From Pecten maximus (lineage: Eukaryota), in assembly GCF_902652985.1 (NCBI RefSeq), contig NC_047023.1:20150001-20214000 (forward strand): 64,000 nucleotides of DNA. The letters are read 5' to 3'. Numbering within the stretch: position 1 is the stretch's first letter; each line of letters opens with the position of its first letter. The notes below the pieces were generated by a model, which was given only the letters and a program-made list of their open reading frames with translations, was not told the origin of the DNA and did not search any database. Below are positions 8,236 through 59,504 of this stretch, piece after piece. A program made the position numbers and the translations under genes.

Positions 8236-11200
8236 ATGTGGTTCCACATAGTGATTGCAACGGCGATCTTGCTGATGGTGAGGATATGTTGAAAAATTGT
8301 CAATTGAAAGTAACATATCATTTAAAAATTCTTATTTGGTTTATCCGAAGGAAAATAAACCAATTTATTCTCATTTTGAAAAAAAAGTAAATTGCAGATC
8401 TGTTTAAAGCTATTAGTGGTTTAAATGTTTTGTGCAAGGAACACACGGCTGCTATTCTGATATTCAAATATCCGATAGAAGCAAAAACAAAGAAAATGTT
8501 CTTTAGTTTTTGTATAACATGTTTCAATTATTAACTGGATATTTTCTCTCTCTGCAGAATGAAGTCGAGTCCGCACCTCAGCCGACAGCTGGTAAGTCAT
8601 ACATTCTTATATTCTATTGACCGAAACAATCATGCATGTTGTCTTTCCCCTCTTGGTGTTTGTCTCCTGATTAATATTGTGTATTATCAGTCAGTAAGAC
8701 GTGATATACATTGGAGATTACTGTTGACCTAGTTATTTAAAATGCTGGACGCCTAACATTTCGTTAATGAGTAATGGGTATGTAGTAATTGAACGGAAAG
8801 ACGGTTGCTATAATCCGGATATTGTTCCGACGATTTTTTTCGTGAAATTTTTGTGTGTTTAATTTTGGCTCATTCACCCCAGGCGCCAAATAAACAAACA
8901 TATAACAACATCCAAAATATCCCAAAGTACGGTATCAAATATCAAACCATTATCGTGTATATATAATTTTAACCAAAGTAATTTTTCCATTCAATAATGA
9001 GGCATACTACCCGTTGCCTCATAATCGTTAAACTTTAAATTGGTTTCTCATAATTGCTCGACTATGACACAACTAATCCGAGCGCATCAGAATCGCTCGA
9101 TGGTTAAAATCTAGTTGGTGCAATGTGGATGTCTGGAGCTGTCGACAACAAATCAAATACTGTGATCTAATGATAATTTAGGATTTTTGTTAAATATTTA
9201 ATGATAACCATTTGATAAATTGTATGATCATTCATTAATAATATATTATTAACACTGAGTTATAACGAAGAGGCAAATTCTTTACCCTTGCCTGCTGAAT
9301 AACAAAACGGAAAGAGAGTTACATAAATATTGTTGCATACTTGCTAAATATAAGGAGCAGAAATCTGTTCATTATAATCATCGTTTATATAATTTGAATA
9401 TCATTGGCATCTAAGATGACTATCAAATTAAGATGACTATCATAATTGATTTTAATTATTTCAATTGCTTTGTTCTTTATGTTACTTTGTTCAAGATTAA
9501 ACTAAATAAACATACAAGGATCGAATAATTTTTAATCAAGCTTCAAAGCTATTTCGGAGATTTCTGAAGCATTGTTTATCATAATCCGTGATTCTACATA
9601 TTATGAAGTTTATAGTCCGGAATTTGAGTTATGGAAGATATGTTTTTGATAATTGCAAGAAATTCTAACTTAACCGTAGAGTCACAAATGCAGCATATAC
9701 TGCCTGTATTTCAACACTGCGAAAGAGTTTATATTTCTTGAAGTTCCTGTTTTCCTCATTCGACAATATGAAACAATGACATATCATAATTACCACATAA
9801 GCAATATGGTGCCGGAAACAAACGCTTACCCTATTTAGATCACCCTGTTTTGCNNNNNNNNNNNNNNNNNNNNNNNNNNNNNNNNNNNNNNNNNNNNNNN
9901 NNNNNNNNNNNNNNNNNNNNNNNNNNNNNNNNNNNNNNNNNNNNNNNNNNNNNNNNNNNNNNNNNNNNNNNNNNNNNNNNNNATACATTAGAACGGTTAT
10001 TTTGGTCATGGAGAACTTCGATGTCTACCTATAGCATCACCCTGTATTTTACTAGTTGACCCAGTTTATCAGTCAAAGGCTATCAGAGGAGTATTCCTCA
10101 ATGGCAGTATAAATCGGTCTTAAAGACCGAGAAAAAAACGTAAAGACCGATTTATCTTGTGTAATGACGATGGTACACTTAATAAATGCACGTTTTGTCT
10201 TTTTTTTCACTTAAAAGCAGACTAACAATCAATACTAACAGTTGAGCATTAAAATGCCTTCTTTGGCAAGTTAATGTTCTATAATTCTCATAGGATTGCA
10301 GACAAAATATGATTTACGATTAATTTGTCTGCAATCCTGTGATAATTACAGGACCATTACTTTCCAAAGAAGGCAGTTCAATACTTATATTTCTGTTTTA
10401 AATTTAACGTTTCCTTATATTCAACAGGTAACAGTGTTATCACATTGAAGTCAATGTGACCTGTTCTTGTGACGTAACGAGTATAAGCTGTTGTTTTGTA
10501 GTTTATTACATTGTATTTATGTTTAGCTTCAAATTACGTATATGACTGCAAATAAGAAATTATTTAATTCCAATGGTTTGGGTTACTTCTCCTGGCTCTG
10601 GTAAGGTGATTTTATCAGATACAGACGCAGGACAAAAGTATTCGCACGATTACGTGTGTTAAAAGCAACGGAATCTTGTGAATACTTTTGTCCTGGTTAT
10701 GAAGCATAATACGTTATTAACTACAGAGAATATAAATGCATGTATTATTATTTTTTTTATTTATATTTATTTGTTGATACAGACACGCAATGTGGCCCTA
10801 TGGATGTCGTGTTCCTGTTGGATAGTTCTCAGGAGATGAGTCTCGAAGACTTTGAAAAACAACTCGAGTTTGCCAATGGTATTGTTGACCGATTAGATAT
10901 TGGGCCAGGTCCGACACAGACGAGAGTCGGGGTCATTAGTATCGGGTATACATACCTGCTTCAATTCTACCTCAGGACACATACATCCAAGGATGATGTG
11001 AAGACGGCTATAAGCCAGATCAACCATCGCTTCTCGTACAAAACCAATACCGGATCTTCAATCCGATTCATGACACGGTATATGTTCAGACCGTTCTTTG
11101 GCGGCCGCCCAGGAGCGACGCGAGTTGCGATTGTAATAACTGATGGACGGTCCAAGGATGTCAAGAGTTCCAGGTTTGAGGCCCTCCTTGCTAGGAAGAA

Positions 11201-14200
11201 GGGTATTAAAATGTTTGTAATTGGAGTTGATGTCCAGAATGAATACGAACTCATCAGTATTGGTAGTAAACCAAAAGACAACTACGTGTTCAAGGTGGCC
11301 AATTATGAAGATCTTCATTCCGTAATACCTAATTTGCCAAGAACCTCTTGTGAAGGTATGTAGATTTCTATCTACAATCATTTAGGTAATATGAACAGCG
11401 GAATCATGCAATTATTTTTGTTCCTACATTTTAAAAAGTTGGCTTAGCATGTTTAGGGTTTTTGATATGTTGTTCTGAACTTGAAGGTGCTGTTTAATCA
11501 GAATCGTCTCAGATTATTTTCTTATTAAAAGTAAATTATATGTTTTTAGTGTGTATCAAAGATATGTATTTTGTGACATTTAAGGCGACATTGACAAATA
11601 TATGCGGATCCTTACAAGTAGTATGCTTTTTGTTCGGTTCAGATAAATCGTTTTATCTTAGCACTTCAAGCAGTCTCCCTTATGGTATTGTAGTGTCTAG
11701 GGGAGCCACTTTCGTTCTTCAAAAACAAATTATAGATACGGAACTTGCATAATGATGCACATTAAGGGTGAATTCCTGTCCTATCTTTCATTATAGACAG
11801 TATGTCCTTGACCTGTCAATGAGGTTCCAAAGGCTAATTTATCAAACGAACTATGTAAACATTGTCTTAAGTCGGTCAACTATAGATGACGATGTCAAAA
11901 CCTGATAACTGGTTACTTTAACATATCAGACATTCTGCTCGCAAATCCAATACTACTACACACTTCTTTAAGAAAACATGTACGGCAGAAATAATGTTAG
12001 AGAATCAGATTTTTTTTGTTCACAAAACATTTCATTGTACTTGATATTCTATTCCACACTAATATTCATTTCGTTATTTTACTCTGTTTTTAATTTGCAC
12101 TTATATTTATATTATTCTATAAAAAAAACTTTAATGGGTTTTATTGTGTAATCTCCGCTATTGAATAACTTCATTACTGCAGGTCTATGTTAATTGCGAT
12201 TAATGGCGTGTTCTTAATTGACACACGCCTTGCTGCAGGCGATGAAGTGTCATGTATGAATATTCTTCCGATTTAGTCATACTGTATACGTTAGAGTTTC
12301 CTATTAACAACGTGATAGTCAGGAAATAAATACTAGAACAGAGACACTAGAAACAAGGGTTTTGTTTATTCTTACAATATCATGCACCTTAATTGACCTA
12401 CTTGTTGAATCGGCTATTCTTATGTATATGAAAAACGCAAGCTGATGCCGGGCTTGATTTCAACAGGAAAACACTTTTTGTACAAACACATAAGCTCATG
12501 TGCCCGCTCTCTAATAACACTTAAACATGATTTGATTGGGTTATATTGATATAAATATCAATACAGTAATGGTCTAGTTAATCGCTTTTGTTTCTTATCT
12601 TCATGCAGTGTCTTCATTGACTACAAGACGCCCAGCACCAACCAAACGATTCACCTTTGCCCCGCTCAACTTTGACGCGTTCAAATTTGTGCCAACGAAG
12701 GCACGTGCTCCAATATCTGTGCCGTCCTCGGTGACATCTGCGCGGACAACACGGGCGAAGATTCCAGCTACCTCTGTCTCAACTACTGGTCCACCCACTA
12801 CAAAGATACTAACATCCTCTAATCCATCTTCTTCCGAATCAACGCAAAAAACTACTGGTCCCCAATCACAAGGTATGACCACAAATCCTCCATCTACACA
12901 AGCGCCAACAACTCGTGGTCCCATTTCATCTCCTGCGACGACAAATATCCCGTCTACACCAGCGCCAACAACTCGTAGTCCCATTTCATCCACCACTACC
13001 ACAAATATCCCGTCTACACAAGCGCCAACAACTCATGGTCCTATTTCATCTCCTACGACGACAAATATCCCGTCTACACCAGCGCCAACAACTCGTAGTC
13101 CCATTTCATCCACCACTACTACAGATATACCGTCTACACCAGCGCCAACAACTCGTAGTCCCATTTCATCCACCACTACCACATATATACCGTCTACACA
13201 TGCGCCAACAACCCGTAGTCCCATTTCATCCACCACTACCACATATATTCCGTCTACACCAGCACCAACAACTCGTGGTCCCAATTCATCTCCTACGACG
13301 ACAAATATCCCATCTACACCAGCACGAACAACTCATGGCCCTATTTCATCAACCACTACCACAGATATTCCGTCTACACCAGTGCCGTCAACCCACGGTC
13401 CCAGTTCTTCTTCTTTTGTCACAAATCCTACATCTACACCAACGCCAACAACTCATGGTCCACATTCACCTACACAAACGCCGACAACCAATTATCGGTC
13501 GTCAACGCCGCCATCATCATCACCTAGGGCAATCATTTCTTCATACGAAGTCTCGAATCAACCACCAGAGCTGGTTTCCCCCGACGGTTTATCTGACATA
13601 TCTTTGTCCAATGAACCTGTGGAGATCAACAATGCTCCTACAAAGCAAGTTTCAGAGACAAAGGGAGCATACTATAAGTATTTTAAGAAACTCTATAAAG
13701 AGAAACGACCTTTACAGAGAATGTCAACGGGAAATAATATACCCAATGTTCTCTCAAGCAACAACGGTAAATGGGCCCCGGCCCCCGGCAACCAGAAGAA
13801 TGAACGGCAGTACGACGCCATGATGAAAAAAGACAAGCAGATTTGGTCTATGATGATGGGGCCACCTAAGCCTATTAAAAGGCCTTTCCGATTCAACAAG
13901 CTATCTCGTGACATCGCTATTGCAGATGAGCCGAAGCAATGTAAGTATTCCAAAAGTTGACACATTTTCAAGATCAAAATATATTTGTGTGAAACATGCT
14001 CTTATAGGCAGACATGTTTTTGCATGCATTGTGAATGACTATTTGTTTTAGATACCTTGCTATTTACTTTACATGCGTAACAATATAACTCAGATACCTG
14101 CTTTACCTGCTTTGGAAGTTTCCATACCTTCCAGCCGATAATAAACACGTCCAGATGTCTTAAGAAACTTATTTTGTGATGTAATGTTTGCTATCACGTC

Positions 14201-17200
14201 TACAAAACATGTGTTATACTCAGGTTTTTACGATACATAAATGACGGGAAGCAATCAATCCTCTCCTCATTCTAATTGACTTGAGAACCGAATTTTGTTT
14301 TATTCTTTCTATAGTTCTAAGTCCAAACACAGTTGAAATCGTTCGTGACGTTCCTCTATGTACAAGTCATAGACTTTTTTTTGTCTCTGGCTTTTATTTG
14401 TGACTCGGTCACCATTTACGGATGTATGTAGTTGACATTACATAACACCACAAGAAATCCACAAAGACATCATTTCTTTTCAAGTGTCAACTTTGTATAA
14501 TTATTTGTATCTTAATTGTAACGGATATAGTTTTTTTTAAATTTATTTTTTGGTGTTTTCCTTTATGTCTTTGTTGATATAAATATACATATTTACATAT
14601 GTGTCAATAAAATATTTCATTGGTAAAAAAGATATATCTTTCATACACTAAACACGTTTGAAATGTATGTTACCACACTTAGAAGCTAAGTAGACAAGGG
14701 GCGTCTACTTAACTTGTAGACCGGATAAAACACATCGAAGTCGAGGTTAAAAGGACACTGTCCTTTAAAAGCTTCGTACCATCAAAGCCACGCAGCCTGG
14801 TAAGCTCGTTAATGGGGGAGTTAGTGTTGATGTGGTTCATTTTCACACCGATAATTACAAAGTAAAATAAATGATTAATTAATATATATTTTAAATATAA
14901 CCGTGTCCAACGTTTAGCGATAACAGAATTTTAGCAATTTTCGCAGAAGAAGGATTTCGCTGAATTTTGATTGTACTAATGGTAGTTTATCAACAGTTTT
15001 ATATGGTTAGCACTGTACGCTTATTTATGATTGTACTAATGGTAGTTTACCAACAGTTTTATATGGTTAGTACTGTACGCTTATTTATGATTGTACTAAT
15101 GGTAGTTTATGAACAGTTTTATATGGTTAGCACTGTACGCTTATTTATGATTGTACTAATGGTAGTTTATCAACAGTTTTATATGGTTAGCACTGTACGC
15201 TTATTTATGGTTGTACTAATGGTAGTTTACCAACAGTTTTATATGGTTAGCACTGTACGTTTATTTATGATTGTACTAATGGTAGTTTATCAACAGTTTT
15301 ATATGGTTAGTACTGTACGCTTATTTATGATTGTACTAATGGTAGTTTATCAACAGTTTTATATGGTTAGCACTGTACGCTTATTTATTATTGTACTAAT
15401 GGTAGTTTACCAACAGTTTTATATGGTTAGTACTGTACGCTAATATATAATTGCTTGCGCTAATCCGTTTTAATTAGTTTTTGCGTTAAAATTTAAGCAC
15501 GCTTAAATAAGTACATTTCCATTCGGTAAATCATCCTTAATTGTGATATACATTGTATATACATACAACATCCAGTTAATTTTACTTACATTCACTGAAC
15601 TATACTTCGTACAGTTATACATAGAGTTATTCCCCTTTGTTAATTCTTTAAATCTATGTCACCTATATTCACCCAACGTATAAGATTGATTTCTTAAAAA
15701 GACTGAATGTCACGCACTGAAATTGGAAAATGTTTACAGTACAAGATTGATGTTAATTTTTGCTATTGCTTTATCCGGAGTATCAATACCTTCAGGTAGG
15801 GCTTACGAATTGTTTCCCATTTCTTACCCCAATTACTATATTATTGGTCATCGGAAAGTTTATTGGCCATACAAATGTGATTATATTTAAAATTTCACTT
15901 AACAAGGTATCATCTGCAAATAATTTTAAGTAATAAAATATACTGATAGCAATATAAGCTACATTTATATCGTTTACAAACAACAAAAATAAAACGGGCC
16001 TAAAACAGACCCTTGAGTAAGACCACCATTTGCAGATTTTAAAGTTTAGAACAAGATAATTTTTTAAACCATCCTAACAATTTTATTTTATGCCATAGGA
16101 TTCTCATTTATGTATCAAAAGCTTTGCTTTTATCACAGAAAACAAAGGACTTATTTACCTTTATCGAGGGAATTTATGATATTATGGTATATCGAAGGTA
16201 GTTCATCAACAGTTGAATTTCCGCGGATAAAGCCTTACTGATGTTTAAGAAAATGTTTGATTTCATTCAAGTAGCTAAACAGATATTAAAAAAGACCCTT
16301 TTTCTATCATGTTACTAAAGCCGGATGTAACGGAAATGTAGGCGATCATTATAAAGCAGTCATCCTTCAATTCCTTTCCTATCTAATGTAGTTAATGCTA
16401 TTCTAGCATTTTAACAATCAATATCCAGAAATAGTTTCCTACTTTATTGCATTATTCCATTAAAAAACCCCCACCTTTTTGTTTGTCTTAAGTTGATAAT
16501 ACATAGCTACGAGTGTATTGTTCCGCCCCAACAGTACTTTCTAATTCTACAGTATATCATGGAAATAGAGCGAACAAGAATTTCAGTATTATACCCGAAT
16601 TATTGAACCATTGTCTTTACAGATTGTGGTGGTAAGAATGCTGACGTGTTCTTTGCCCTGGACTCCTCTAACAGTATCTGGCCAGAGGACTTCCGGAAAC
16701 AGATTGAATTTGTCACCGATCTTGTGGACACGTTTGACTTCAGGAACAACAAGACCAGGGTTGGCATCATCATATACAGTACCGACATATACACGAAAGT
16801 GTCACTGCAGTCGGGCTGGACTAAGGAACAGATCAAACGACAGCTCAACAACACAGAATATGTCAGTGGACTAACAAACACCTCAGACGCCATACGCTTT
16901 ATCCGTTCCTATGGTTTTACTGAAGCAAATGCAAGAGAAGACGCTATCAAAATTGCGATCATACTGACTGATGGTATTTCACGAGATCCTTTGGCAACAA
17001 AGCGTGAGTCCATACTCAGCAGAGAAGATGGTATAAAGTTGTTCGCTATAGGAATTGGTACAGACGTCGATGAAACAGAACTCAAGCGAATTGCAAACGA
17101 CCCAGACGACAAGTATGTGTTCCACGTCAGTAGCTTTGGTGCACTAGCCTCTATCAGGAGTATGGTTGCTGTCAGCGCATGCGGAGTGGTACCCGATCAA

Positions 17201-17954
17201 CCTAGCAATTTGTTTTGTAAGTGCAAAAACATAGATATGTAAACATATTCTATTTGAAATAAAATACGAAGAAAATTAAATCAAAAGTGAAGAGTAACAG
17301 AGGAAAGAATCCTCTAACGTGATTCAACCTCAAATATTTCAGTTCCTCATTCATTTTTTTTTAATTTCAGCCTGCGGCGCCGATTCCTTAGCTGACGTCA
17401 TATTTGTTTACGACGCTCCTGGCCTTGGTGCCCGCAAGGCGCGCCTATTGACATCATTTGTTCATGACGTCACTCGTAGTCTCCAGACCAGCTCCGGTAA
17501 GCTGAGGATTGGTCGCAGGTCTGACAGCTGTCCTTCCAATAGCAACATCGACTTGACAACTGATATCAACCTGCAAGCATTCAGCAACATCATGTTTCCT
17601 GGGATTGAGACGCTACTTGGACAACTTAGAATGGCGTTTCCGAATAGATTAGACGCCAAAAATTTAGCGATAGTATTTGTAGACGAAAGTACGCAAAACA
17701 TCGAGTTGGCAACTAGAGTTCTGAAGGGGGACCTCAATTTCCACGTAATGGTAATTGCTATTGGCGACATGTCTTTAGCCAGAGTTGCAAGTGACCTTGC
17801 CTCTCTTCCATACAACGACTACCTGATGAACATACCATCGTATATGTCTCTTGGGGAATATCGATACGAATTCCTCAAGAAACTCTGCTATCTCATCACA
17901 AACGAACCAATATATTTACGAGATACCAGAGTAAGACAAACTCGTGATCTCTGA
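8236..17954 (+). CDS. Gene A: secreted triple-vWA protein with mucin-like Thr/Pro/Ser linker (collagen VI/matrilin-like vWA), ~1052 aa, 6 exons
   Basis: Exons 8236-8277, 8558-8591, 10783-11355, 12609-13940, 16623-17216, 17371-17954. All GT-AG, phases 0,1,1,1,1, total 3159 nt in frame. Signal peptide MWFHIVIATAILLMNEVES-AP. vWA1 DVVFLLDSSQE..ITDG, vWA2 DVFFALDSSNS..LTDG, vWA3 degenerate DVIFVYDAPGL. An extra exon hidden in the 9854-9982 gap cannot be excluded. Confidence 0.88.
9854..9982. other. Assembly gap (N run) in intron 2 of gene A
   Basis: Run of N. Confidence 1.
10243..10387. mobile_element. Long imperfect palindrome (hairpin-ended non-autonomous element, Crypton-like by inference)
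   Basis: gcattaaaatgccttctttgg...caaagaaggcagttcaatactta; ends resemble those of 45590-45749. Confidence 0.5.
10628..10695. repeat. Short inverted repeat / hairpin
   Basis: caggacaaaagtattcgcacgatt ... aatcttgtgaatacttttgtcctg. Confidence 0.75.
10783..11355 (+). CDS. Gene A exon 3: vWA domain 1 (MIDAS partly degenerate, DSSQE)
   Basis: CGPMDVVFLLDSS...TRVGVI...TNTG...AIVITDGRS...MFVIGV...SCE; phase 1-1. Confidence 0.92.
12609..13940 (+). CDS. Gene A exon 4: mucin-like PTS region with 20-aa (60-bp) tandem repeats and a basic Tyr/Lys/Met-rich tail
   Basis: ~10 copies of TTNIPSTPAPTTRSPISSTT-like units; acceptor catgcag, donor T|gtaagt. Confidence 0.85.
14968..15440. repeat. 60-bp minisatellite, ~8 copies, in intron 4 of gene A
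   Basis: Unit tgattgtactaatggtagtttatcaacagttttatatggttagcactgtacgcttattta. Confidence 0.97.
15790..16400 (-). mobile_element. Decayed CR1/L2-type LINE reverse transcriptase fragment
   Basis: Minus-strand motifs FCDKSKAFD, QGSVLGP, LFVNDI and LFADD, broken by frameshifts/stops. Confidence 0.75.
16623..17216 (+). CDS. Gene A exon 5: vWA domain 2 (intact MIDAS)
   Basis: CGGKNADVFFALDSSNSIW...TNTS...LTDG...LFAIGIG. Confidence 0.92.
17371..17954 (+). CDS. Gene A terminal exon: degenerate vWA domain 3
   Basis: CGADSLADVIFVYD...LRIGR...AIVFVD...MVIAIG...KLC; stop TGA at 17952-17954. Confidence 0.85.
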
Positions 17955-19717: not shown

Positions 19718-19759
19718 TAACCGAGGTATTTAATGTGTAATTATATAGTCAATGAAAGT

Positions 19760-20995: not shown

Positions 20996-21552
20996 TTACA
21001 GTCTGATATGGAAATACTCCAAGTCCAGTACCGGGCAAAGCAACTCCAGGAATGCGTCTTTGTATGATAACAACTCCCTGTATGATGGCACGCGGATGAA
21101 GGTGTTATGAGCCAAGTATGGGATATTAGTGGACTCGTCTGCTCCGATCACTACTGTGACAAACCGTGTGTCGGGCATGGTCGCCATTTGTCTCACAACC
21201 TGATCGACATCGTGAAGTCTGTTATCCAAGAATACGATGGCCACAGATTTGGCACCTGCTCTGCCACCATTTAACGTGGAGAAACCAGAAGCGCGAAGTT
21301 TCCTTATCAAATCGGTGATGCCCGGAAGAACTTGGTTGGACCAAACATGGATGTCATCGGGAGATGAGAGAGCAGTGTATGCGTCATTCAAGCAATCATA
21401 CAACATGCGTCCTACGCGGACATTTCCAGAGGGGACATCCAAGCTCTGGACGATTTTGGAAACAAATTTGGAGATATAGCTGGTTTTCGACTGTCCAAGG
21501 GAAAGAACGTCATACATGAAAAGAACGTCTGACATATCTCGGCTTCCACAAA
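20996..21552 (-). CDS. Gene B terminal exon: degenerate vWA domain 3
   Basis: CGSRDMSDVLFMYD...VRVGR...NGGR..AKSVAIVFLD...LLCP; stop TAA. Confidence 0.88.
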
Positions 21553-24500
21553 CTGAAAAACATAAATTGCATTGTTTGTATTAAGGCTTTTTCATTATGT
21601 TTCTATTTTTCAAAGAGTCGTTTAGTAAAACAGAGTTTTACTTCCTGATAAAAGATCACATATATAATTTCTTTTCCCTAGTGTTATAAGTTTTGTACCA
21701 ATGAACATCGTAATACAGTTTAATTTAACGCTTAGTGTACTTACGCTTTTCAATATCCAGTTCACACGTCCTCGAAGCCAGAAGGTCCTTAATGGAATCC
21801 AATGCCCGGAAGCTCCTGACCTGGAACACATGCTTATCATGGGGTTCATTCCCTATATTCTGGAGTTCCTGAAGTTTTGCGCCATTTCCTATACCGATAG
21901 CAAATAGATATATTCCTTGATTCCGGGCAAGATCTGATTCTATTTTTGTTTGCATTTGGTCTCGTGAGAGTCCATCTGTGAGGACGATAATAATGTGAGC
22001 CACGCCCTCCCGTCTCCTCTCCTCCGTAAAACCACTTTCTCTGACAAATCGGATTGCCTCAGCAGTATTAGTTGTACCATAAGCATACGGGATTCTCTGA
22101 ATGGCGTCAGACAAACTTCCTACTGTGTTTGCAGATCCGAGAGGGACTTCAAGGTTGTATGAATTACTGAAAGTCACGACCCCAACTCGAGTTTTGTCCT
22201 GGGAGATATCAAATCTGGAAACCATGTTCTTGACGAATGTCTTCTGGCGCTCGAAGTTGTATTTTCCAATACTAGTTGAGGAATCCATCAAAAAGTAAAT
22301 ATCTGCTGGCTTTCCGGTGCAGGCTGAAGAAAATAAAAATTGAAAATGAAGAATCATGTAAAATAAAATAGTAAAATAGAAAATAAACCACAGAGGCAAA
22401 GCTCAAGGGGAAAATGTTACCGCTGCCGTAACAGGAATGAGGATCCTTCAGGACATAAAAGACGACGTTATTCCCTTAAACAAACCGGAGATGAAAGAAA
22501 ACACTAGATCGGCTACGTACCTTTGATGAAGAGAGATGGGTCGATGTCCCCGACAGGTGGCAATGTCCATGAGGTGTTCCTCCTTCGCGTGGTGGTTATA
22601 GCTTGGCGTGTTGGTCTAGGTGTTATTGGCCTTCTGGGAGTAAGCCGAGCTGTAATTGGCCTCCGGGGAGTTGGCCTAGGTGTAATTGGCCTTCTGGAAG
22701 TGGGTCTAGGTGTTGTGGGTCTGGGAGTTGTAGGTTTACGTGTTGTAGGTCTTGATGTTGTAGGTCTAGGTGTTGTAGGTTTGGTTGTGGTAGGTCGAGG
22801 AGTGGTGGTTGAAGTAGTGGTGGTAGTGGTTATCATTCGTCTTGTTGTTGATCCTGGAAAATTCATTACATATACAATTAACTATATCTAGATATAAGTA
22901 AATACATTTACACCAGCAAATCATACGTATATTAAAAAAATCAATACACATACAATTAAATACATCTAGATATAAGTGAAAACATTTACAACAGCAAATC
23001 ATACGAAAATTAAAAGAAAAAAAATGTCTTCGCCATACCTAGTTCATTTGTTGAGTTGGATGTCAGGATATTTAGACAAGAATAGTCACTTACTAAGAAT
23101 ATAATAATAACACTGACACGAGTCTGTCGTGCCAGGAAGCACTTGGGTTTCTCATTAATCAATTACTTGACTTATGATTTATGTTAGGCGATTGTTCCGG
23201 TATGCCTGTATTGTTAATACTTCTTCAGATATTACTGTTATTTTGGCATCTACTCGATCATAAAGGCAATTTAACTTAGATAACTGGCGAAATAGGAGAC
23301 TTTTTATCATGAAGACTTTAGTTTACGATCCACGCCACTAGCTGACTTGTGACCCCATACACAGTTGTCTGTCATGCCAGGGTGGCATAAAGTGTAGACT
23401 GCGGAAGATTGTAGGCGGTAATGAAGACATGTTCAGGACCATTTGAAAGACTGTAGCCATTTAATAGGTGCATAGCAAAACATATGTATCCGGTGCTCAA
23501 CAGGACACCACAGTGCTTTCGTAATGTTTGGCAATATTCGAAACAGATAACCTTAACTTCCTCAATGATAAAATGTGCAGTAGAGAAAAAATGACATGTG
23601 CATGTTTTGTAAGGAGCGTTTGATAAGATGAACATTCTGCTTACAGTGTTATAGAGTTGATTCATTTTAAATAACATCCGTTACAAAATAATCAAATATC
23701 TGATTTAAGCAATTGATATTGCTTAGAAAATGTTAATATTTTTACTCCAATTAAACATATTATGATGCCTTTGAGCTTCCTTCACACGCTATGGTAAACA
23801 CGTCTACACTAACAAACGCATATTGTTAATCTTTCGGATGATTGCGAGTAATTAGTAGAAATATCAGTTATTTGATTGTAGTATCGAATGTGAGAATACC
23901 TATACGTCGTTATTCTTTTGACATAGCTCAAATTGGAATATTGCATTGATTTAAATTATTTTTCTAATCCAAAAAAATCATCGAAAACCTCCATTGTTGT
24001 ACGTCTTCAATAGTGAGGTATACCACTGTTAAACGCAATGAAGTATCTATTTATTTTGTATAAACATTATATAAAGACCCGGGCGTTGTTATGGTTGTAT
24101 TAAAAGTAATTTAAGGTCGATGAGAGACAGGCTCAGAACATTGATGGATGATTGATGTGTTTCAATATCATGCTAGCTAAATTATAAATGAGTTTTCTAT
24201 ACTTAAATATTATTTTATTACTACAGTGCATCCCGACATTCATGATACAGGTGATTTGAACTTTAAATGTGCTATATATTTATTGATATGGGTCGCCGCA
24301 TCTTCTTGAGCGTTATTTTTGATCTAGAGGAAATTGCTTATAACTGACAAGGCGCATGAAATGTGATCACAGACACGAGCACATAATGAAACCCGGATAG
24401 GTTTGACGAGTGTACCTACTTACACATCAATTCGTCTTTTATAAACTCCAAAGTGTCTTGAATTGAACGAACTTCACGAACTTGTATGTAAGAGTTTATG

Positions 24501-26685
24501 TGCCAAACATAACACGAATTTATAAACAATAAACATTCGGCTGAATGACAACTTGATTGATGAAGTACATATTTGCCAAGAACGGCACTCAGTGAACAGC
24601 CATTAGCTCTTCAAATAGTGTTTTAAGAACCATTTTATCTAAAGCGCTACTTAGTAAGTCAGGAAAGGTTGTCGCCTGTTGCCAGTAATAAAGACTTATG
24701 CAGCTTAATTGGTCACATGACATGATAACAAATTATCACATGATTTCTTTTATATCGCTGCTTAGATAAATCATTCAACTCATCGTTGAACTAATATACA
24801 ATGCTACATGTTGTCAGTGTTAATATAAACAATGCTAATTGTCGCTATACTCAACAATGTTGATAAAAAACCCAATATCATCATATCAAAAACTAATTAC
24901 GATATATATAACATAATCTGTTTTAAACTTCAGAATGTTAATGATGTTGCAATAATTACCTCTACATGCACGTTGCTTGAAGACATCCTTCTCAGACAGC
25001 AGGGCGTCATAGTTTTCCACAGAGAAGAAGTACCTATCGTCAGGATCGCTAGCTATACCTCTCAGTTCACTCTCCTTAACGTTCGGTCCAACGCCAATGG
25101 CGTAGATCTCAATATCCTTGTTATGAGCTGCCATGGCAGCCTCTAGCGTCTTCCGCGACTCCTGCGACTTTCCATCTGTGATGACAATGGCGATGTGAGG
25201 CAGGTCTTCTCTTCCTCCATTACCCCGCTGGAACATGCGCGTTGTCATAAACTTGATAGCACTTCCAGTATTTGTCCGGTCACCTTGTCTGTGACGGATC
25301 TTCTTGATAGCAGCTCTGACGTCAGCGACATTTTTGTACCTATTGAGCTTGAATTTGACATAGTAGCTCCTGGCGAATGTCAAAACCCCGACACGGGTTT
25401 CGTCAGGGCCAATATTGAATCCACTGACAACACTGTCGACAAATTCCAGTTGCTTCTGGAAGTCTGGATTCCAGATACTACTTGAAGTGTCCAGCACAAA
25501 CACAATATCAGCGGCTTCGTTACACAGGGACTCAGTGGCTACATCAACAAATGCAACAATTAATAAATTAATACAAATGATTTCGAGGTTAAGGATCATG
25601 AACTGTAATAGATTGATACAAAATATATTTTTGATGGATCTGTATACGAAAAAGTTATTTTTCATTACATATAATGTAACGTGCCTTAGTTAGTTTTCAA
25701 TAGTATATGGAATAGTAACGATGTTTCAGATTTGTTTTAGACAAATGAAAAAAGGAAATGTTTGAAAAAGATAGCAAATGAGTTTTACACGTGAGACACA
25801 AACCAAAGATAAAAACGGGGAAGGATGAGAACGTTAATACAATCATTTATAATTTGTTACCAGGATGGATTTAAGGGAAACACCATATGTTTATCGCAAA
25901 CTTCTGATGACATCACATAATATACCATATTTACCATACAGGCGATATATGTTGAATACATAACATTATCCTGGTATATAACAAGTGATATGGACATATC
26001 AAATTAATACGGTTAATATTATAGGCTATATTATAATAGAGCTGTAATGATCTCGCTAACATTATTGCATTTTCGTTTTCTACTTCAATTCCTCGTGTAG
26101 AATAGAAGTAATCGATAAAACAACGTGTTTTTGAAGACTATTGTTAACATGGGCATGTGGATAGGATACTTACATCTGCGTTGCGCATGCACTTGCAGGA
26201 GTGCCTGTTAAAGAAAAAATAAATAAAACTTATTAGTTAAATATTTATTGCTTGCATTTATATTAAAAAATGGGAATTTTCGACAAATCATGTGCTTGTA
26301 TTGTTACCGTGTACATTGGCTAAATAAAGGAGAGTATAGCATGTACATACGGTTAACACATGGGAATAAATGAGATTGAGATCGAACGTAGTCAGCCCAC
26401 ATTATAGCACAAGTGATAAAAAGCTTAAGGAAATTAATTCTTATAATTTTTATCAATTCATAAGAATTTTAGGTAACATGCATGTAATTAGTAGATTTTT
26501 CTGTTTCGACTATTACAACTACGACATTCAACGATTCAACGGATTATTTCTATTTATTATATAATAATAGCCCCAAAATAAGTCAAAATTATCATAAATA
26601 CCAATAAAGTGGTAAAGAAAAGAAAACATATAATAGGAAAATACAATAGACTTACCAACGCAGCAATCAACAAAAGTATCTTCAT
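20996..26685 (-). CDS. Gene B: secreted triple-vWA protein with Thr/Pro/Arg-rich linker, ~702 aa, 6 exons
   Basis: Exons 26685-26656, 26204-26174, 25538-24960, 22853-22521, 22323-21745, 21552-20996. All GT-AG, phases 0,1,1,1,1, 2109 nt in frame. Signal peptide MKILLLIAALALLQVHA-QR. vWA1 DTSSS, vWA2 DSSTS, vWA3 degenerate DVLSL. Confidence 0.92.
21745..22323 (-). CDS. Gene B exon 5: vWA domain 2 (intact MIDAS)
   Basis: CTGKPADIYFLMDSSTS...TNTA...LTDG...LFAIGIG...RTC. Confidence 0.93.
22521..22853 (-). CDS. Gene B exon 4: cationic PT(T/P)xR pentapeptide linker
   Basis: TTTPRPTTTKPTTPRPTTSR...PITPRPTPRR; ttttccag acceptor, G|gtacgt donor. Confidence 0.85.
24960..25538 (-). CDS. Gene B exon 3: vWA domain 1 (intact MIDAS)
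   Basis: CNEAADIVFVLDTSSSIW...TNTG...ITDGKS...IYAIGVG...RAC. Confidence 0.93.
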
Positions 26686-48098: not shown

Positions 48099-50260
48099 AT
48101 GTTTATTCCATTTTTTATTTTATCATTGGTAAGTAAAAAGATTTTAGAAAAACATGATTTTTTTGGATATAACGGCATTATTTATGATATCATCTAATGA
48201 TATTGAAAAACATGAAGAACTGATAGGAATGTAAACTAATGTCAATTTTAAATCATTTCTCGATATATAAGTGCTAAACAATGTGCTCAATATCAATTCG
48301 TAAATATCTGGGTAAATATTAAATATATTTTGACATAGAATAAGTGTATTTTTAACACCTGATTGTTTTGAATAACATATATTATTCATAGTTTCTTTAT
48401 ATTTTTTCAGATATCTGTTGCTGTTGCTGCTCCAATGGCTACAGAAGAACCAGTCGACGTTTTAAAATGTAAGTTTGATCTATAATTATATTGGATGCAT
48501 CTTAATTATTTCAGAAATTAGTTTTATTGTCATTTACACGAAAATAGTCTTACTTTAAATAAACAACTAACAAAAACACCGTTATACGATGTTTACAAAT
48601 TAACTTATCTATTTCATTTGGATTTCAGTTTGCCATGGGAAGCCTGCCGATATTTTCTTTCTACTAGATAGCTCCTCAAGCATATGGATCGTACACTACC
48701 GGAAACAACTCAAGTTCATACAGGACCTCGTCGCCACATTCCCTATCTCCCAGACCGACACAAGAATTGGTGTTGGTATATTCTCCCACCTTTACCAGAC
48801 GCAAATATCATTCGGAGATTTTGATAACGTGGATGACCTTCAAAACAGGATAAAAAGAATACCTCATATGTTGGGAAGCACTTACACAGGACGAGCATTA
48901 GGAAAGGTCCGGAATGAGTTTGTCAGGAAGGCCAGGCCAGGTGTGGCACACGTTGCTGTGATCCTCACCGACGGGGTGTCAAGAAACGTGATCTCGACCT
49001 TTAACCAAGCTCGACTCCTAAAGGACCAAGGGGTTTACGTGTTCGCAATAGGGATTGGCAAAGGACCAAATATGAAAGAGCTTCAAGCCATTGGAAGCAA
49101 ACCTAGTGATGAGTTCGTCTTCAAAGTTGCAAGTTTCAACATACTGGAATCTATCAAGGACAAACTTGCCATGAAAGTCTGTAGAGGTGAGGAAATCTTC
49201 TTTAAAATAATTCTATGACATTTATATCAAATGGTAACTATGATCGTATCCATGTGATTAAAAAATAAAATATTCAATATTGTGAAGTCTTCCGTCAAAA
49301 ATCGAATTTAAAACATCACCGGGATTTCAATTTTTGTTTACTTTTTTTTGGGGAATAACAGAGTGTGTGTTTTTAATACAAACAATATTTTTTGATATTT
49401 TTTGTTGTAGTTCCCAAATATCAAGCCTATTGTAGCGCAGAAGTAGAGACTGATGTGATGTTCGCCTATGATTTTGCATCCATGGGAACAAAGAATGTGC
49501 GACACGCACATAACTTCATTAGTGACGTTGTGGGGAAATTTGGAAACATGGCTGAAGGAATGGTAAGAGCAGGGATGCTTTCTGGATTTTGTGAAAACAG
49601 TCGAATTGACCTCAACCAGTACAATAATAAAGCGGAAATGTCCAGCGCTGTCCGTAACACCGAGGTTAGAGGTCTGGACAACATCGTTGAAGAACTCCAT
49701 CGCAACAGTTACAACATATCCAGGGGAGGACGGGAAACGCAAGAAAAATGGCCGTTCTTTTTGTGGATGACTCTGTAGAAAAATTCGATCAACTTATTGT
49801 TCAGTCGGAAATAGCGAAGACCGCAGGAATCAAAGTGTATGTTGTGGGCGTTGGGAACGTTGATGAGGAAATCCTGAGTACCATCTGCTCAAGTCCTCCA
49901 GAAAACCACCTGATGCGAGTATCTTCATACAATGACCTGGATTCTATTGCAGAGCAATACTCCGAAATGTTCTGTGAAGGTGAGAACTTTATATAATGTC
50001 GAACGTCTTACGCTTGCTCACAAGCAGAATATATTTTGACATAAAAATGCTTGTTTAAATTTTCTTTTTATGAAGAATAATATGTCCGTTCTGTGCACGC
50101 TTCAAAATTAAATATATATCAGATGTTATATAAATAATTTATATAATCAGCAAAATGCACTTAAACTTCCCAAAAAAGTTTATCAGAGGTTTTTATTAAC
50201 ATCAAAAAATAAAGTTATGTTTATTTTTCAGAAATGTCCGTTTTACCCGACTATGAATAA
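48099..50260 (+). CDS. Gene D: near-identical duplicate of gene C, secreted double-vWA protein, with a 1-nt frameshift at ~49732-49734
   Basis: Exons 48099-48128, 48411-48468, 48629-49186, 49411-49979 (569 nt), 50232-50260; cggg here vs cgggg in gene C. Confidence 0.85.
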
Positions 50261-57075: not shown

Positions 57076-59504
57076 CTAAGGCTCGAGAATCAGATTTGCA
57101 ACCGGCATTACGTCCTCAAAGTTCCTTGTTTTCTCATCAATGACAAGTGAAGCCGGGAAGCTGGGAACTTTCAACGCTGGTGAAGAAAAAGAAACAAAGG
57201 TTAAAATAATAATAACAATAAAACGGATGCGTAAAGTACACATATGATAATAGATCATAAGCAGTAGATATAAGTATCGCTTTGATTCTTAATTTTCTAA
57301 AATAATATTTTTCCTAAGATGGATTACACCAGGGTATTATGAATTATTTCTGGAATTCTTTACGTAAATCATTGAGTCATAAAATATTTCTAAAATTTAT
57401 TATTTCTATCTCAAATTATATTTTTGGTAAACGCAGTGTTTCGGCGAAATGAAATTTTGAATTATTAGTGACATATTTCTAACGAATTTAACGGATTATA
57501 TATTCACAAAATTGAAGCCTTAGAAAAACGAAATATTATTTCTGAATTATTTTGTGTTTTTGTCTATAAATTCTCATACAATGGAATAATTGCTCTCGTC
57601 AGACTTACTTTCACACAAACTGCTGACAAATGTATCCTTCATCAAGTTGAGGTCCTTGTGTGTGTCGACATTAAAGAAATGAGCGTCGACTGGACGGAGA
57701 ACGGATCTTTTCAACATTTCAAACTTAGGGTTCTCGCCAATGGTAACCACAACAAACTGGATGTCTTTCTTTGATTTAGCCCTCCGCATTTCAAAAGCTA
57801 ACTTATCAAGCTTTTCGACATTATTGTCAACCACTACAACTGCAAGCCTTCGTGCAGTTTCCCTCCCACCATTAGCTTTTTCAAAACTTTGATTTTGCAT
57901 CTGCCAAATCATTCGGTCAAGTCCTCTAAATTGTCTGTGTTTAACAACAGGGATCAGCTCGTCTAGTTGAGGATAACCGTCCAAATAAATATCCTTATTA
58001 TCGCAGTATCTAGTTATCAGTCCCGCTTTGAGAACTCCGGTATCCATGTTCCCAAAGTTTTCTATAGTATCAGCAATCAAATTCTTGACGTGGTTGGAGT
58101 TCCGTGCACCCATACTAGTAGCATCGAAGGTGAACATCAAGTCTGTTTCCATGCCGGCGCTGCAGTCAGGTTGTGAATTTAATTCCTCCCCTGTGACATA
58201 TAATAACACATCCTTAGATATTGACGTCATTCAACCTGATTTATTTTCAATGTGCTGTAATTTCTTTATGTAAAAATACTTTTATTTTTTTAAACAGGAC
58301 TTTGTTACACATGTATTGTCTTGTTGTGATTTTCGTGCTTAATCAAAATGAAAAAAATCATGAATACTAAGTTGATATCTTACCTTTACAAACTTTATAG
58401 GTCAATGTCTTCCTGATTTCATTTAACAGTTTGAAGTTTGACACGGTGAAGACGTACGTTTCTGATGGTTGACTTCCAATGGCAACTAACTCATCCATTT
58501 TGACCTTATCTCCAATTCCAATGGCAAATACTGTTATCCCTTCATATTTCAAAGCCGCAGCTTCGTATTCTGTCTGGAGTTTATTTGTGGACTCTCCGTC
58601 CGTCATTACCACTAATATCTTACTGACATTTGGACGGGCTCTACGGAATTCATTATTCCTTACAACTCGCAATGCTTTCCCTGTTTGAGTACTGCCTTTC
58701 CGTTGTTGTATGTTTTCAATCGCAAGTTTAAGTTCATTTACATTATCAAACTCGCCCAATTCTATTTGCTGATAATACTGATCAGCAAATATCCCGACAC
58801 CAAAGTGAGTTTGAGAGGCTGACACCGGGAAGAATTCCACAAAATGCTGTAGAAATGTGAGCTGTTGTTGAAAGTGCTTGGACCAGATACTCGTAGAACT
58901 GTCGAGCAGGAAGAAAATGTCAGCAGGATTGCCTCTACACACTACAACAAGAATGACATCCGTTAATGTTAAAATGTACATGAAATTATCATTCTTTTCA
59001 AATATACGTAACACAAAGCGGTCCGTCGAACAGTCATAATCACTGGAAATAAAATATATAACGAGTTTTAAAACAAATCTGTATTATCTGTTGGGAAGCA
59101 TTGTTACTTACATTTATTTAGGACATTACTTTATTGTCTGCTAAGAAGCATTGATACGTACATGTATATTCGTCTTGGTGGGATGTAGAAGGAGCTGGTA
59201 TTGCCTGAATAGACATGACCTGGCGAAATGAAAATAAAAAAATATCATAACAATGTCTCTTAATTATTGTTCTTATTCTTTCGACAGTTGAGTAAATATA
59301 TTTCGCAGTGTGGATTATTTCAAAATAACGTTTTGCAAAGGTTAACAATATTTAAGCTTCCCATAATGGCTATAAAATGCTTATGAATTACGTTTTTAGT
59401 TAATCAATTGTTCTGTTAGTAAAATGCTCAATTCAACTTTGATCGAACAATAACTAATTCAATCATTTACTCACCATTGCCATAATAATGGAACTAGCTA
59501 GCAT
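57076..59504 (-). CDS. Gene E: secreted double-vWA protein, ~442 aa, 5 exons, intact paralog of C/D
   Basis: Exons 59504-59475, 59219-59162, 58941-58384, 58190-57609, 57176-57076, 1329 nt in frame. Exon sizes 30/58/558 are identical to C/D. Signal peptide MLASSIIMAMVMSIQA-IP. vWA1 DSSTSIW..MTDG, vWA2 degenerate DLMFTFDATSMG. Confidence 0.92.

What the first reader, a model, noticed from the sequence alone, without database searches (positions are those of the whole stretch)
8236..59504. Five-gene cluster of secreted tandem-vWA proteins: a candidate multi-component adhesive/mucus/matrix system
Seen: five paralogs (A-E) lie within ~51 kb in +,-,+,+,- orientation. All have a signal peptide split by a phase-0 intron (first exon exactly 30 coding nt in B, C, D, E), a TATA promoter and no transmembrane, collagen or chitin-binding segment. 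They fall into two size classes, long (vWA-mucin-vWA-vWA) and short (vWA-vWA). Known: stand-alone secreted vWA proteins occur in bivalve byssus (mussel PTMP1) and shell matrix (Pif97, BMSP), and vWA MIDAS sites bind Mg/Ca and collagen. Inference: a lineage-expanded, co-regulated kit of cross-linkers and glycosylated spacers forming a secreted gel, byssus or shell matrix.
Basis: partly seen in the sequence, partly recalled or inferred. Interest (0 to 1): 0.8.

Follow-up and report, generated by a model that had tools for sequence, protein, structure and literature searches.

The report
Scallop cluster of secreted tandem-vWA matrix genes
The five genes are real members of a larger, conserved king-scallop cluster of secreted matrix proteins built from von Willebrand A domains; they belong to an uncharacterised mollusc-wide family, and nothing here ties them to byssus, mucus or shell.

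Summary
The window is Pecten maximus contig C9:20,150,001-20,214,000. The five paralogs exist as described, in +,-,+,+,- order. Their signal peptides are cut by a phase-0 intron: 30 coding nt in B-E, 42 in A. All have a TATA-like box. Pfam finds only VWA domains. There is a long class (vWA-mucin-vWA-vWA) and a short class (vWA-vWA).

- The cluster runs beyond the window, with genes F, G and H up to C9:20.277 Mb.
- C and D are 98-99 % identical twins. Each has a 1-nt frameshift in exon 4, and NCBI fuses them into one model. F has two frameshifts.
- The last domain of every member is a conserved vWA without a MIDAS site and with an extra invariant Cys. It is predicted to homodimerise.
- Short terminal exons exist in C, D and E.

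Every gene has a 1:1 orthologue in other scallops, and gene order is conserved. The family also occurs in mussels, unionids, gastropods and cephalopods. It is not PTMP1, matrilin, collagen VI or Pif.

The assembly gap lies in intron 2 of A and hides no coding sequence, judged from the orthologue. RNA libraries hold A and B, but their tissues are not known. My best reading is bivalent extracellular-matrix cross-linkers. A byssus role is possible but not shown.

The parts
8236..17954 (+). Gene A, long class, 1052 aa model. Exons: 8236-8277 (signal peptide part 1, 42 nt), 8558-8591, 10783-11355 (vWA1), 12609-13940 (mucin-like), 16623-17216 (vWA2), 17371-17954 (C-terminal MIDAS-less vWA, stop).
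   Evidence: Pfam VWA 1.9e-41, 6.5e-38 and 3.1e-3. Splice and frame search. Orthologue A. irradians XP_069138665.1 maps at 77-91 % in the three vWA exons and 48 % in the mucin exon, in the same order.
9854..9982 (.). Assembly gap (N), inside intron 2 of gene A.
   Evidence: The exon 2 / exon 3 phases match, and the orthologue has an N-terminus of the same length. Not filled; not bridged by reads.
12609..13940 (+). Mucin-like exon of A (444 aa, phase 1-1), with 60-nt (20-aa) Thr/Pro/Ser repeats at 12878-13466 and a conserved basic, Tyr-containing tail.
   Evidence: Tandem repeat, period 60 x 9.8. Composition. Conserved tail against A. irradians.
20996..26685 (-). Gene B, long class, 702 aa model. 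Exons: 26656-26685 (30 nt), 26174-26204, 24960-25538 (vWA1), 22521-22853 (TTPRP mucin-like), 21745-22323 (vWA2), 20996-21552 (C-terminal MIDAS-less vWA).
   Evidence: Pfam VWA 1.4e-48, 2.9e-47 and 3.1e-6. Model. Orthologue Y. balloti XP_060073208.1 (687 aa) at 81-90 %.
39342..41523 (+). Gene C, short class. Exons: 39342-39371, 39657-39714, 39864-40421 (vWA1), 40645-41213 (C-terminal vWA, 1 nt short), 41495-41523 (tail EMSVLPDYE, stop). As assembled, the frame breaks at 40864-40867 and stops at 41010-41012.
   Evidence: The intact orthologues have 414-415 aa.
40864..40867 (+). Frameshift site of C: 1-nt deletion relative to D and to the orthologues, next to an A-run.
   Evidence: C/D alignment; position.
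48099..50260 (+). Gene D, twin of C. Exons: 48099-48128, 48411-48468, 48629-49186, 49411-49979 (1 nt short), 50232-50260. The frame breaks at 49732-49734 and stops at 49776-49778.
   Evidence: Exons are 98-99 % identical to C; the whole 3.1-kb match, introns included, is 92.4 % identical.
49732..49734 (+). Frameshift site of D: GGG where C has GGGG.
57076..59504 (-). Gene E, short class, 442 aa. Exons: 59475-59504, 59162-59219, 58384-58941 (vWA1), 57609-58190 (C-terminal MIDAS-less vWA), 57076-57176 (tail).
   Evidence: The model translates exactly to XP_033750924.1. Pfam VWA 1.4e-38 and 3.1e-9.

Best explanation
These genes are part of a conserved tandem cluster of at least eight loci on Pecten maximus contig C9: A, B, C, D and E in the window, then F, G and H. 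They encode secreted extracellular-matrix proteins made only of vWA domains.

They belong to a mollusc-wide family that databases call 'cartilage matrix protein-like' or 'collagen VI/XII chain-like'. The family has three defining parts: a signal peptide; one or two canonical vWA domains, each bracketed by Cys and carrying a MIDAS site; and a family-specific C-terminal vWA that has lost the MIDAS site and gained a third, invariant Cys. The long members A and B also carry a Thr/Ser/Pro spacer between vWA1 and vWA2, probably O-glycosylated.

Likely mechanism (inferred). The MIDAS domains bind a matrix partner through a metal ion, as integrin I domains, collagen VI and mussel PTMP1 do. The C-terminal domain pairs two chains through its former MIDAS face, possibly fixed by the odd Cys. 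The result would be bivalent cross-linkers: short and rigid (C-G), or long and glycosylated (A, B).

The short class multiplied in the scallop stem lineage. C and D are a recent P. maximus duplicate. F is decaying, and C and D are either decaying or mis-assembled. The tissue is not known. Connective-tissue, mantle or foot matrix is the default reading, and byssal gland is one candidate.
For: Shown:
- vWA domains by Pfam.
- Organism and gene E identity.
- MIDAS D-x-S-x-S, T and TDG are invariant in vWA1 of 20 family members. The DxSxS serines are missing from the C-terminal domain, which instead has invariant C225, C278 and C408 and near-invariant G323, G324 and R325.
- Cys counts are 5 in the short class and 7 in the long class.
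- A profile of the C-terminal domain scores 100-274 bits on the last domain of about 50 representative proteins. Their other vWAs score 35-70 bits.
- 1:1 orthologues in other scallops, with starred branches.
- Conserved gene order in Ylistrum and Mizuhopecten.
- The same family occurs in Mytilus, Pinctada, unionids, Mya, Haliotis, Patella, Octopus and Sepia.
- The AlphaFold model shows two alpha/beta vWA folds (mean pLDDT 75.7). The best whole-length PDB match is PTMP1 (E 1.4e-22).
- RNA-Seq runs hold 0.31-0.35 of the words of a stretch covering the 3' end of A and all of B.

Model-level support for dimerisation: a homodimer of E residues 219-413 scores 0.71, best of 3 controls 0.02. That mark was reached by 21 of 30 proteins solved as pairs of one chain and by 0 of 23 solved as single chains. 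On eukaryotes it was reached by 17 of 29 pairs, but by only 1 of 7 with no older solved relative. The runs agree in at least 97 % of contacts, and the partner's pLDDT is at least 88. The interface includes C278, L285, G323 and G324.
Against: - There is no tissue information; run names are coded.
- No reads could be laid.
- No binding partner is known.
- The dimer is a prediction and may reflect the model's memory of vWA packings.
- Conserved residues are only mildly enriched in the predicted interface: by my count, 8 of the 20 invariant or near-invariant positions lie among 56 interface residues out of 195.
- The orientation of the two domains in the monomer model is uncertain (pTM 0.47; rmsd 15 A to PTMP1).
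- Three of the five short-class loci are broken as assembled.
Confidence: 0.6

Rival explanations
1. One reading: a byssus or foot-gland kit. The cluster would be expressed in the byssal gland, and its products would cross-link or space byssal proteins in juvenile scallops.
For: In Chlamys farreri, five vWFA secretome genes with DxSxS and TDG motifs rise in the proximal foot. One of them is O-glycosylated and rich in low-complexity sequence (PMC9168380). 'Matrilin' is high in the proximal foot (PMC5700196). The short class expanded in scallops. The two-vWA fold is most like the byssal protein PTMP1.
Against: The same paper found no vWFA protein among the 16 byssal proteins identified by mass spectrometry. 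I could not link its gene ids to these genes, because no supplement is held. The family is present in animals without a byssus: Haliotis, Patella, Octopus, Sepia. Transcripts are held by runs of 8 of 9 studies of a species whose adults make no byssus; that point about adults is from my own knowledge. Mytilus has its own family member (P0188), which is not PTMP1.
Confidence: 0.25
2. Shell-matrix proteins secreted by the mantle, acting like the vWA parts of Pif or BMSP.
For: A vWA domain is part of the conserved bivalve shell-proteome toolkit, P. maximus included (PMC5854119). Many P. maximus RNA libraries are from mantle; this is my own knowledge, not tested.
Against: There is no chitin-binding domain and no acidic or low-complexity mineral-binding region. 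Shell-less cephalopods have the family. No peptide evidence could be checked.
Confidence: 0.1
3. Partly decaying cluster: C, D and F are true pseudogenes, and only A, B, E, G and H work.
For: There are four frameshifts in about 3.8 kb of C, D and F coding sequence, and none in about 9.7 kb of A, B, E, G and H. If the four fell at random over all the coding sequence, the chance that all lie in C, D and F is about 0.006 (my estimate). NCBI flags F as 'LOW QUALITY PROTEIN' and models C-D through the shifted frames.
Against: The C and D lesions sit at an A-run and a G-run. They lie at different sites in exons that are otherwise 98-99 % identical. Splice sites are intact, and the terminal mini-exon is perfectly kept. 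Polishing errors are expected in near-identical duplicates. The orthologues are intact in three other scallops.
Confidence: 0.5

Closest known systems
Mussel proximal thread matrix protein 1 (PTMP1; PDB 4CN8, 4CN9, 4CNB)
   Same: A secreted, stand-alone protein of two tandem vWA domains and about 420-450 aa. It is the best whole-length structural match (E 1.4e-22, 404 columns). The vWA1 of E matches both PTMP1 domains by sequence (whole-protein E 3.1e-41; per-domain E-values 1.6e-21 and 1.2e-18).
   Different: Not orthologous: Mytilus has its own member of this family (P0188, 417 aa), which matches PTMP1 only at E 3.7e-34. By sequence search, the C-terminal domain of E finds no PDB chain at E <= 0.01, and it lacks the MIDAS site. 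Domain packing is not comparable (rmsd 15 A). No mucin-bearing form of PTMP1 is known to me.
Matrilins / cartilage matrix protein (the name most databases give these genes)
   Same: Secreted adaptor proteins built on MIDAS vWA domains that link matrix components. Oligomerisation makes them multivalent.
   Different: Matrilins have EGF repeats and a C-terminal coiled coil for oligomerisation. Pfam finds no EGF or other domain here, and no coiled-coil program was run. A MIDAS-less vWA sits at the C-terminus instead.
Collagen VI alpha-3 N-terminal vWA array (PDB 9HAN) and collagen XII/XXII
   Same: Best sequence match of the canonical vWA exons (E 4.6e-77 summed over domains). The vWA exons are phase 1-1 and bracketed by Cys.
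   Different: There is no G-X-Y triple-helix segment and no fibronectin or Kunitz domain. The proteins have 415-1052 aa, not thousands.
Pif / BMSP shell-matrix proteins
   Same: Molluscan, secreted, and containing vWA.
   Different: Those proteins pair vWA with chitin-binding domains and acidic regions. None is present here.
Chlamys farreri vWFA 'byssus-related proteins' (e.g. CF61295.40; PMC9168380)
   Same: Scallop secreted vWFA proteins with DxSxS and TDG motifs, one of them O-glycosylated with low-complexity repeats. There are five such genes. They are possibly the orthologues of this cluster.
   Different: Orthology could not be tested, because no sequences or tables are held. The paper describes neither the cluster nor the C-terminal domain.

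Membership tests
vWA domain superfamily (Pfam PF00092) | Significant match to the VWA profile and an alpha/beta Rossmann-like fold | tested here: met
   E 1e-21 to 1e-48 for the canonical exons. For the C-terminal domains, 3e-9 (E) and 3e-6 (B) pass; A is 3e-3, at 18.2 bits, below the gathering score of 23.8. The fold is confirmed by the model and by Foldseek.
vWA domain superfamily (Pfam PF00092) | MIDAS motif D-x-S-x-S ... T ... D | tested here: met
   Met in vWA1 and vWA2: D43, S45, S47, T114/T116 and T143-D144-G145 are invariant in 20 sequences. A-vWA1 has DSSQE. Not met in the C-terminal domain of any member: DATSM, DAPGL, DVLSL, ESAAM.
PTMP1 | Orthology to Mytilus PTMP1, with two canonical MIDAS vWA domains | tested here: not met
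   The Mytilus member of this family, P0188, is a different protein from 4CN8. The second domain lacks MIDAS and has no PDB sequence match.
Matrilin | EGF-like repeats and a C-terminal coiled-coil oligomerisation domain | tested here: not met
   Only VWA-type Pfam hits in A, B, C, E and G or their orthologues. No coiled-coil prediction program was run.
Collagen VI / FACIT collagens | Triple-helical G-X-Y repeat region | tested here: not met
   No run of 5 or more G-X-Y in any model or orthologue. No Collagen Pfam hit.
Pif / BMSP | Chitin-binding (peritrophin-A type) domain beside vWA | tested here: not met
   No such Pfam hit at E <= 0.01.
Gel-forming mucins | vWD-C8-TIL assemblies flanking a PTS region | tested here: not met
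   A PTS-like exon is present in A and B, but there is no vWD, C8 or TIL domain. O-glycosylation itself cannot be tested here.
Molluscan 'tandem vWA + C-terminal MIDAS-less vWA' family (defined here) | Last domain scores at least 100 bits against the C-terminal profile, lies at the C-terminus, and has three conserved Cys and the GGR motif | tested here: met
   A, B, E, G and H meet it in full. C, D and F meet it as pieces.

The most novel reading that the evidence does not exclude
The C-terminal MIDAS-less vWA would be a conserved dimerisation module, possibly disulfide-locked through the invariant odd Cys, that uses the former metal-site face. That would define a so far undescribed mollusc-wide family of bivalent matrix linkers. 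Scallops would have expanded it into a cluster of short rigid and long mucin-spaced forms, and these would be the unnamed 'matrilin/vWFA' transcripts of the scallop byssal gland.
Probability: 0.25. Interest if true: 0.55.

Novelty: new member of a known kind. Interest (0 to 1): 0.38.

Why it matters
Stand-alone vWA proteins recur in mollusc byssus, shell and adhesive secretomes, but only PTMP1 has been studied structurally.

This work shows three things about the scallop genes.
- They belong to a separate, ancient molluscan family with its own C-terminal module.
- They sit in a conserved cluster.
- One public gene model (the C-D fusion) is probably wrong.

That gives annotators and biomaterial researchers defined, testable targets:
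- Does the C-terminal domain dimerise?
- What do the MIDAS domains bind?
- Which tissue makes these proteins?

It does not overturn anything known. The domain family, the secreted-matrix logic and gene-cluster expansion are all ordinary.

Tried and rejected
- I sent window:38900-44800 to test C's frameshift, its splicing and co-expression. My local BLAST scripts still held the whole window as subject. From those places were masked, and later scripts worked beside them. The genome search was given 40600-41250 only. It returned a locus, L012, that spans the places; I did not use it.
- **Word search with the C-terminal domain of E.** Blank, as expected from the length window, so this is no evidence of absence.
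- **Papers.** Supplements of PMC9168380 and PMC5854119 are not held, and those of PMC5700196 have no match. No paper cites the accession numbers. 'Scallop + vitrin' and 'cartilage matrix protein + foot' gave nothing useful.
- **Earlier findings.** Nothing.
- **Second copy of C/D.** I looked for a haplotig to judge the frameshifts. Only C and D exist.
- **Rejected readings.** Exons of one collagen VI-like gene: separate promoters, signal peptides and stops, opposite strands, and separate orthologous genes in other scallops. PTMP1 orthologue. Alternative mucin-less isoform in Argopecten: the 498-aa protein is only a partial ORF.
- **Domain orientation.** The relative orientation of the two domains could not be compared with PTMP1 (pTM 0.47, rmsd 15 A).
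- **Joined models.** The spliced models of A and B were built only inside local scripts, to count length, frame, Cys and composition. Searches used single exons by reference or database proteins. Because of that, the P. maximus NCBI models of A and B were not retrieved.


Full report
**Where we are.** The window is G000:C9:20,150,001-20,214,000 of a 918,306,378-base assembly in 3983 contigs. A database protein that my spliced model of gene E reproduces exactly is XP_033750924.1, 'collagen alpha-6(VI) chain-like [Pecten maximus]', on a contig of 45,552,881 bases, the length of C9. The organism is therefore the king scallop.

**Checking the observation.** Ten long ORFs in the stated range hit Pfam VWA (PF00092). 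E-values are 1e-21 to 1e-48 for seven of them and 3e-9 to 3e-3 for three weaker ones. Using splice sites, frames and orthologous proteins, I obtained these models.
- A (+): 8236-8277, 8558-8591, 10783-11355, 12609-13940, 16623-17216, 17371-17954; 1052 aa.
- B (-): 26656-26685, 26174-26204, 24960-25538, 22521-22853, 21745-22323, 20996-21552; 702 aa.
- C (+): 39342-39371, 39657-39714, 39864-40421, 40645-41213, 41495-41523.
- D (+): 48099-48128, 48411-48468, 48629-49186, 49411-49979, 50232-50260.
- E (-): 59475-59504, 59162-59219, 58384-58941, 57609-58190, 57076-57176; 442 aa.

The first coding exon is exactly 30 nt in B-E and 42 nt in A. It ends in phase 0 inside the hydrophobic core of a typical signal peptide: MKILLLIAAL|ALLQVHA, MFIPFFILSL|ISVAVAA, MLASSIIMAM|VMSIQA. 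The judgement that these are signal peptides is by eye; no signal-peptide program was available. A TATA-like box lies 58-148 nt upstream of each ATG. There is no internal hydrophobic stretch of transmembrane type, no G-X-Y run, and no Pfam family other than VWA types. The descriptive core of the finding therefore holds.

**The assembly gap.** N 9854-9982 lies inside intron 2 of A (8592-10782). Exon 2 ends in phase 1 and exon 3 starts in phase 1, the same layout as in B, C, D and E. The Argopecten irradians orthologue (XP_069138665.1, 1024 aa) has 26 residues before the vWA, exactly what exons 1+2 of A give. No coding sequence is expected in the gap, and frame across it is not an issue. Physical continuity was not tested with reads (see below).

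(1) *The cluster is larger.* A six-frame search of the genome and the fetched flanks show three more loci.
- F (-) lies at C9:20,215,098-20,216,543. It is short class with two frameshifts. NCBI calls it a 'LOW QUALITY PROTEIN'.
- G (+) lies at C9:20,223,562-20,226,278. It is XP-type protein P0183, 415 aa, and intact.
- H (+) lies at C9:20,273,478-20,277,224. It has three vWAs.

Nothing related lies in the 18 kb upstream of the window.

(2) *C and D are twins.* Their exons are 98-99 % identical, against 92.4 % over the whole 3.1-kb match, introns included. Each is one nucleotide short in exon 4: C beside the A-run at 40864-40867, D in the G-run at 49732-49734. As assembled, both are truncated inside the last domain. 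NCBI's XP_033749224.1 (717 aa) reads through the shifted frames and fuses C to D. That is probably a mis-annotation.

Both genes keep all splice sites and an identical terminal mini-exon (EMSVLPDYE, stop), as in the intact 414-415-aa orthologues of Ylistrum, Mizuhopecten and Argopecten. I cannot tell pseudogenes from polishing errors in a near-identical duplicate. Four frameshifts fall in about 3.8 kb of C, D and F and none in about 9.7 kb of A, B, E, G and H, so the lesions are not randomly spread.

(3) *The last domain is special.* In all members the D-x-S-x-S motif is replaced (DATSM, DAPGL, DVLSL, ESAAM ...). The domain is nevertheless as conserved between scallop species (81-87 %) as the canonical domains (77-91 %). 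It carries invariant Cys at its start and end, plus a third Cys (C278 in E), and a near-invariant GGR motif. The canonical domains keep the full MIDAS site and two bracketing Cys. The mature proteins therefore have 5 Cys (short class) or 7 (long class).

(4) *C, D and E have an extra short 3' coding exon.* It follows a phase-1 donor directly after the last Cys.

**Expression.** One 10-kb stretch, covering the last two exons of A and all of B, was looked up in public runs. Twenty runs of the same species in 8 studies hold 0.25-0.52 of its sampled words. Four certain RNA-Seq runs hold 0.31-0.35. The three listed runs of a ninth study hold 0-4 %.

Exons plus UTRs make up about 0.4 of the stretch, and B alone about 0.24. 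Values of 0.31 or more therefore suggest that both A and B are transcribed in the same libraries. This is an inference. Run and tissue names are coded, so no tissue can be named.

No read-level test exists for splicing, the frameshifts, or the joint across the gap. Independent support for the spliced architectures comes from two sources. The NCBI model of E is one. The other is 3.6-kb transcript contigs of Argopecten that encode the whole 1024-aa A orthologue.

**Relatives.** A profile of the C-terminal domain, run against 1.84 billion representatives, finds thousands of vWA proteins. About 50 of them form a sharply separate set. In these the last domain scores 100-274 bits, their other vWAs score 35-70 bits, and the matching domain is always C-terminal.

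Named members come from several groups.
- Scallops: Ylistrum, Mizuhopecten, Argopecten.
- Other bivalves: Mytilus, Pinctada, Tegillarca, Mactra, Mya and the unionids Potamilus and Sinanodonta.
- Gastropods: Haliotis, Patella.
- Cephalopods: Octopus, Acanthosepion, Argonauta.

All carry generic names such as cartilage matrix protein-like, matrilin-1-like, COL6A, vitrin, or collagen alpha-x(VI/XII)-like.

In a maximum-likelihood tree of this domain (quick search, SH-aLRT support), every P. maximus gene pairs with an orthologue from another scallop on a starred branch.
- A pairs with Argopecten.
- B pairs with Mizuhopecten and Ylistrum.
- C pairs with all three.
- E, F, G and H pair with Mizuhopecten.

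The four short subfamilies form one scallop-only clade (96*), with Pinctada next and Mytilus and Tegillarca in neighbouring branches of the same 21-row group. A groups with a Mytilus coruscus 828-aa protein (support 90, not starred).

Gene order is conserved.
- Ylistrum has C-like (-), B-like (+), A-like (-), the mirror image of the window.
- Mizuhopecten has an F-like gene (-) next to the G orthologue (+).
- One Mizuhopecten contig also carries the orthologues of B, C, E and H, judged by the matching contig lengths.
- In Potamilus (tags 013449 and 013452), Mytilus coruscus and Haliotis rubra, a long or three-vWA form and a short form share a contig.

The long/short pair is therefore old. The short class radiated before the scallop genera split. 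Only the C/D duplication is private to P. maximus.

**Structure.** An AlphaFold model of E built on 20 family sequences gives two alpha/beta vWA folds: mean pLDDT 75.7, above 85 in the first domain and 60-90 in the second, pTM 0.47. In the PDB, the best whole-length matches are the three PTMP1 entries (E 1.4e-22, 404 columns, 23 % identity). The rmsd of 15 A means only that both domains match, not their packing. Single-domain matches are integrin I domains, collagen VI N domains and vWF A3. By sequence, vWA1 of E matches collagen VI alpha-3 and PTMP1, while its C-terminal domain matches no PDB chain at E <= 0.01. The Mytilus member of this family (P0188) is not PTMP1.

**Predicted dimer.** I tested one idea raised by the odd Cys: that the C-terminal domain pairs with itself. 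The homodimer of E residues 219-413 scored 0.71, best of 3 controls 0.02. That mark was reached by 21 of 30 proteins solved as pairs of one chain and by 0 of 23 solved as single chains. On eukaryotes it was reached by 17 of 29 pairs, but by only 1 of 7 without an older solved relative, and by 0 of 30 single chains. The runs agree in at least 97 % of contacts, and the partner's pLDDT is at least 88.

The symmetric interface lies on the face where the MIDAS site would be. It contains C278, L285, G323 and G324. This is the model's confidence, not a measurement, and it may reflect known vWA packings.

**Most likely function.** Shown:
- The proteins have a signal peptide and are multi-vWA proteins.
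- Canonical MIDAS domains come first, followed by a conserved MIDAS-less terminal domain.
- A and B carry Thr/Ser/Pro spacers.
- The cluster is conserved.

Inferred:
- The MIDAS domains bind a matrix ligand through a metal ion, by analogy with integrin I domains, collagen VI and PTMP1.
- The terminal domain dimerises, which would give bivalent cross-linkers.
- The spacers are O-glycosylated and make long, hydrated linkers.

Because abalone, limpets, octopus and cuttlefish have the family, its basic role should be general extracellular matrix, not byssus or shell. The scallop-specific radiation could still serve the byssal gland. In Chlamys farreri, five vWFA secretome genes, one of them O-glycosylated and low-complexity, and 'matrilin' are high in the proximal foot. 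Yet no vWFA protein was detected in the byssus by mass spectrometry (PMC9168380, PMC5700196). I could not link those genes to this cluster.

**Comparison and novelty.** The proteins work like PTMP1 or matrilins, as stand-alone vWA adaptors. They fail the membership tests for each known family.
- PTMP1: no orthology, and the second domain lacks MIDAS.
- Matrilin: Pfam finds no EGF repeats, and a MIDAS-less vWA stands where matrilins have their coiled coil (no coiled-coil program was run).
- Collagen VI/XII: no triple helix.
- Pif/BMSP: no chitin-binding domain.
- Gel-forming mucins: no vWD domain.

The genes are already in public annotation under generic names, and I found no paper on them. I file this as a new member of a known kind. 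Its distinctive and possibly interesting terminal module is supported only by computation.

**Verdict.** Interest is moderate to low (0.38).

**Constraints followed.** The gap was not filled. Spliced models of A and B were joined only in local scripts for counting and were not searched, so the joined-model search step was left out.

Noticed in passing
window 4204-5576: Satellite of 27-bp units x 51 (94 % matches). It produces 399- and 432-aa repeat 'ORFs' on both strands, which are artefacts of the repeat and not genes.
   Followed up: partly
window 18840-20270: Three adjoining satellites (74-, 31- and 44-bp units) fill the space between the convergent 3' ends of genes A and B.
   Followed up: no
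window 29132-30845: Satellite of 56-bp units x 30 (92 % matches) in the 12-kb gene-free space between B and C.
   Followed up: no
window 14964-15453: A 60-bp x 8 tandem repeat (95 % matches) inside intron 4 of gene A. It gives a 158-aa repeat ORF.
   Followed up: no
window 52226-52741 (+): ORF with Pfam zf-RVT (zinc-binding region of reverse transcriptases, E 7.6e-7). This is a retrotransposon remnant between D and E.
   Followed up: partly
window 1468-1653: A second run of N (assembly gap), outside the finding.
   Followed up: no
window 39342-50260 (NCBI XP_033749224.1 = P0039): The public 717-aa model joins gene C to gene D by reading through both frameshifted exon-4 frames and D's 5' UTR. 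It is likely an annotation artefact.
   Followed up: yes
G000:C19:32,214,000-32,452,000 and other places: More than 150 vWA exons genome-wide. These include a roughly 240-kb array of dozens of same-strand vWA exons on C19 (a giant multi-vWA gene or array) and smaller groups on C3, C8 and C11.
   Followed up: no
L001:1074-2561 (-) = G000:C9:20,215,074-20,216,561: Gene F has one frameshift in vWA1 and one in the C-terminal domain, while its Mizuhopecten orthologue (440 aa) is intact. It is probably a true pseudogene.
   Followed up: partly
all vWA exons of A-E: Every vWA domain is one phase 1-1 exon that starts just before a Cys and ends just after a Cys. The mucin exons are also phase 1-1. The genes therefore look built by exon duplication and could skip exons in frame.
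   Followed up: partly
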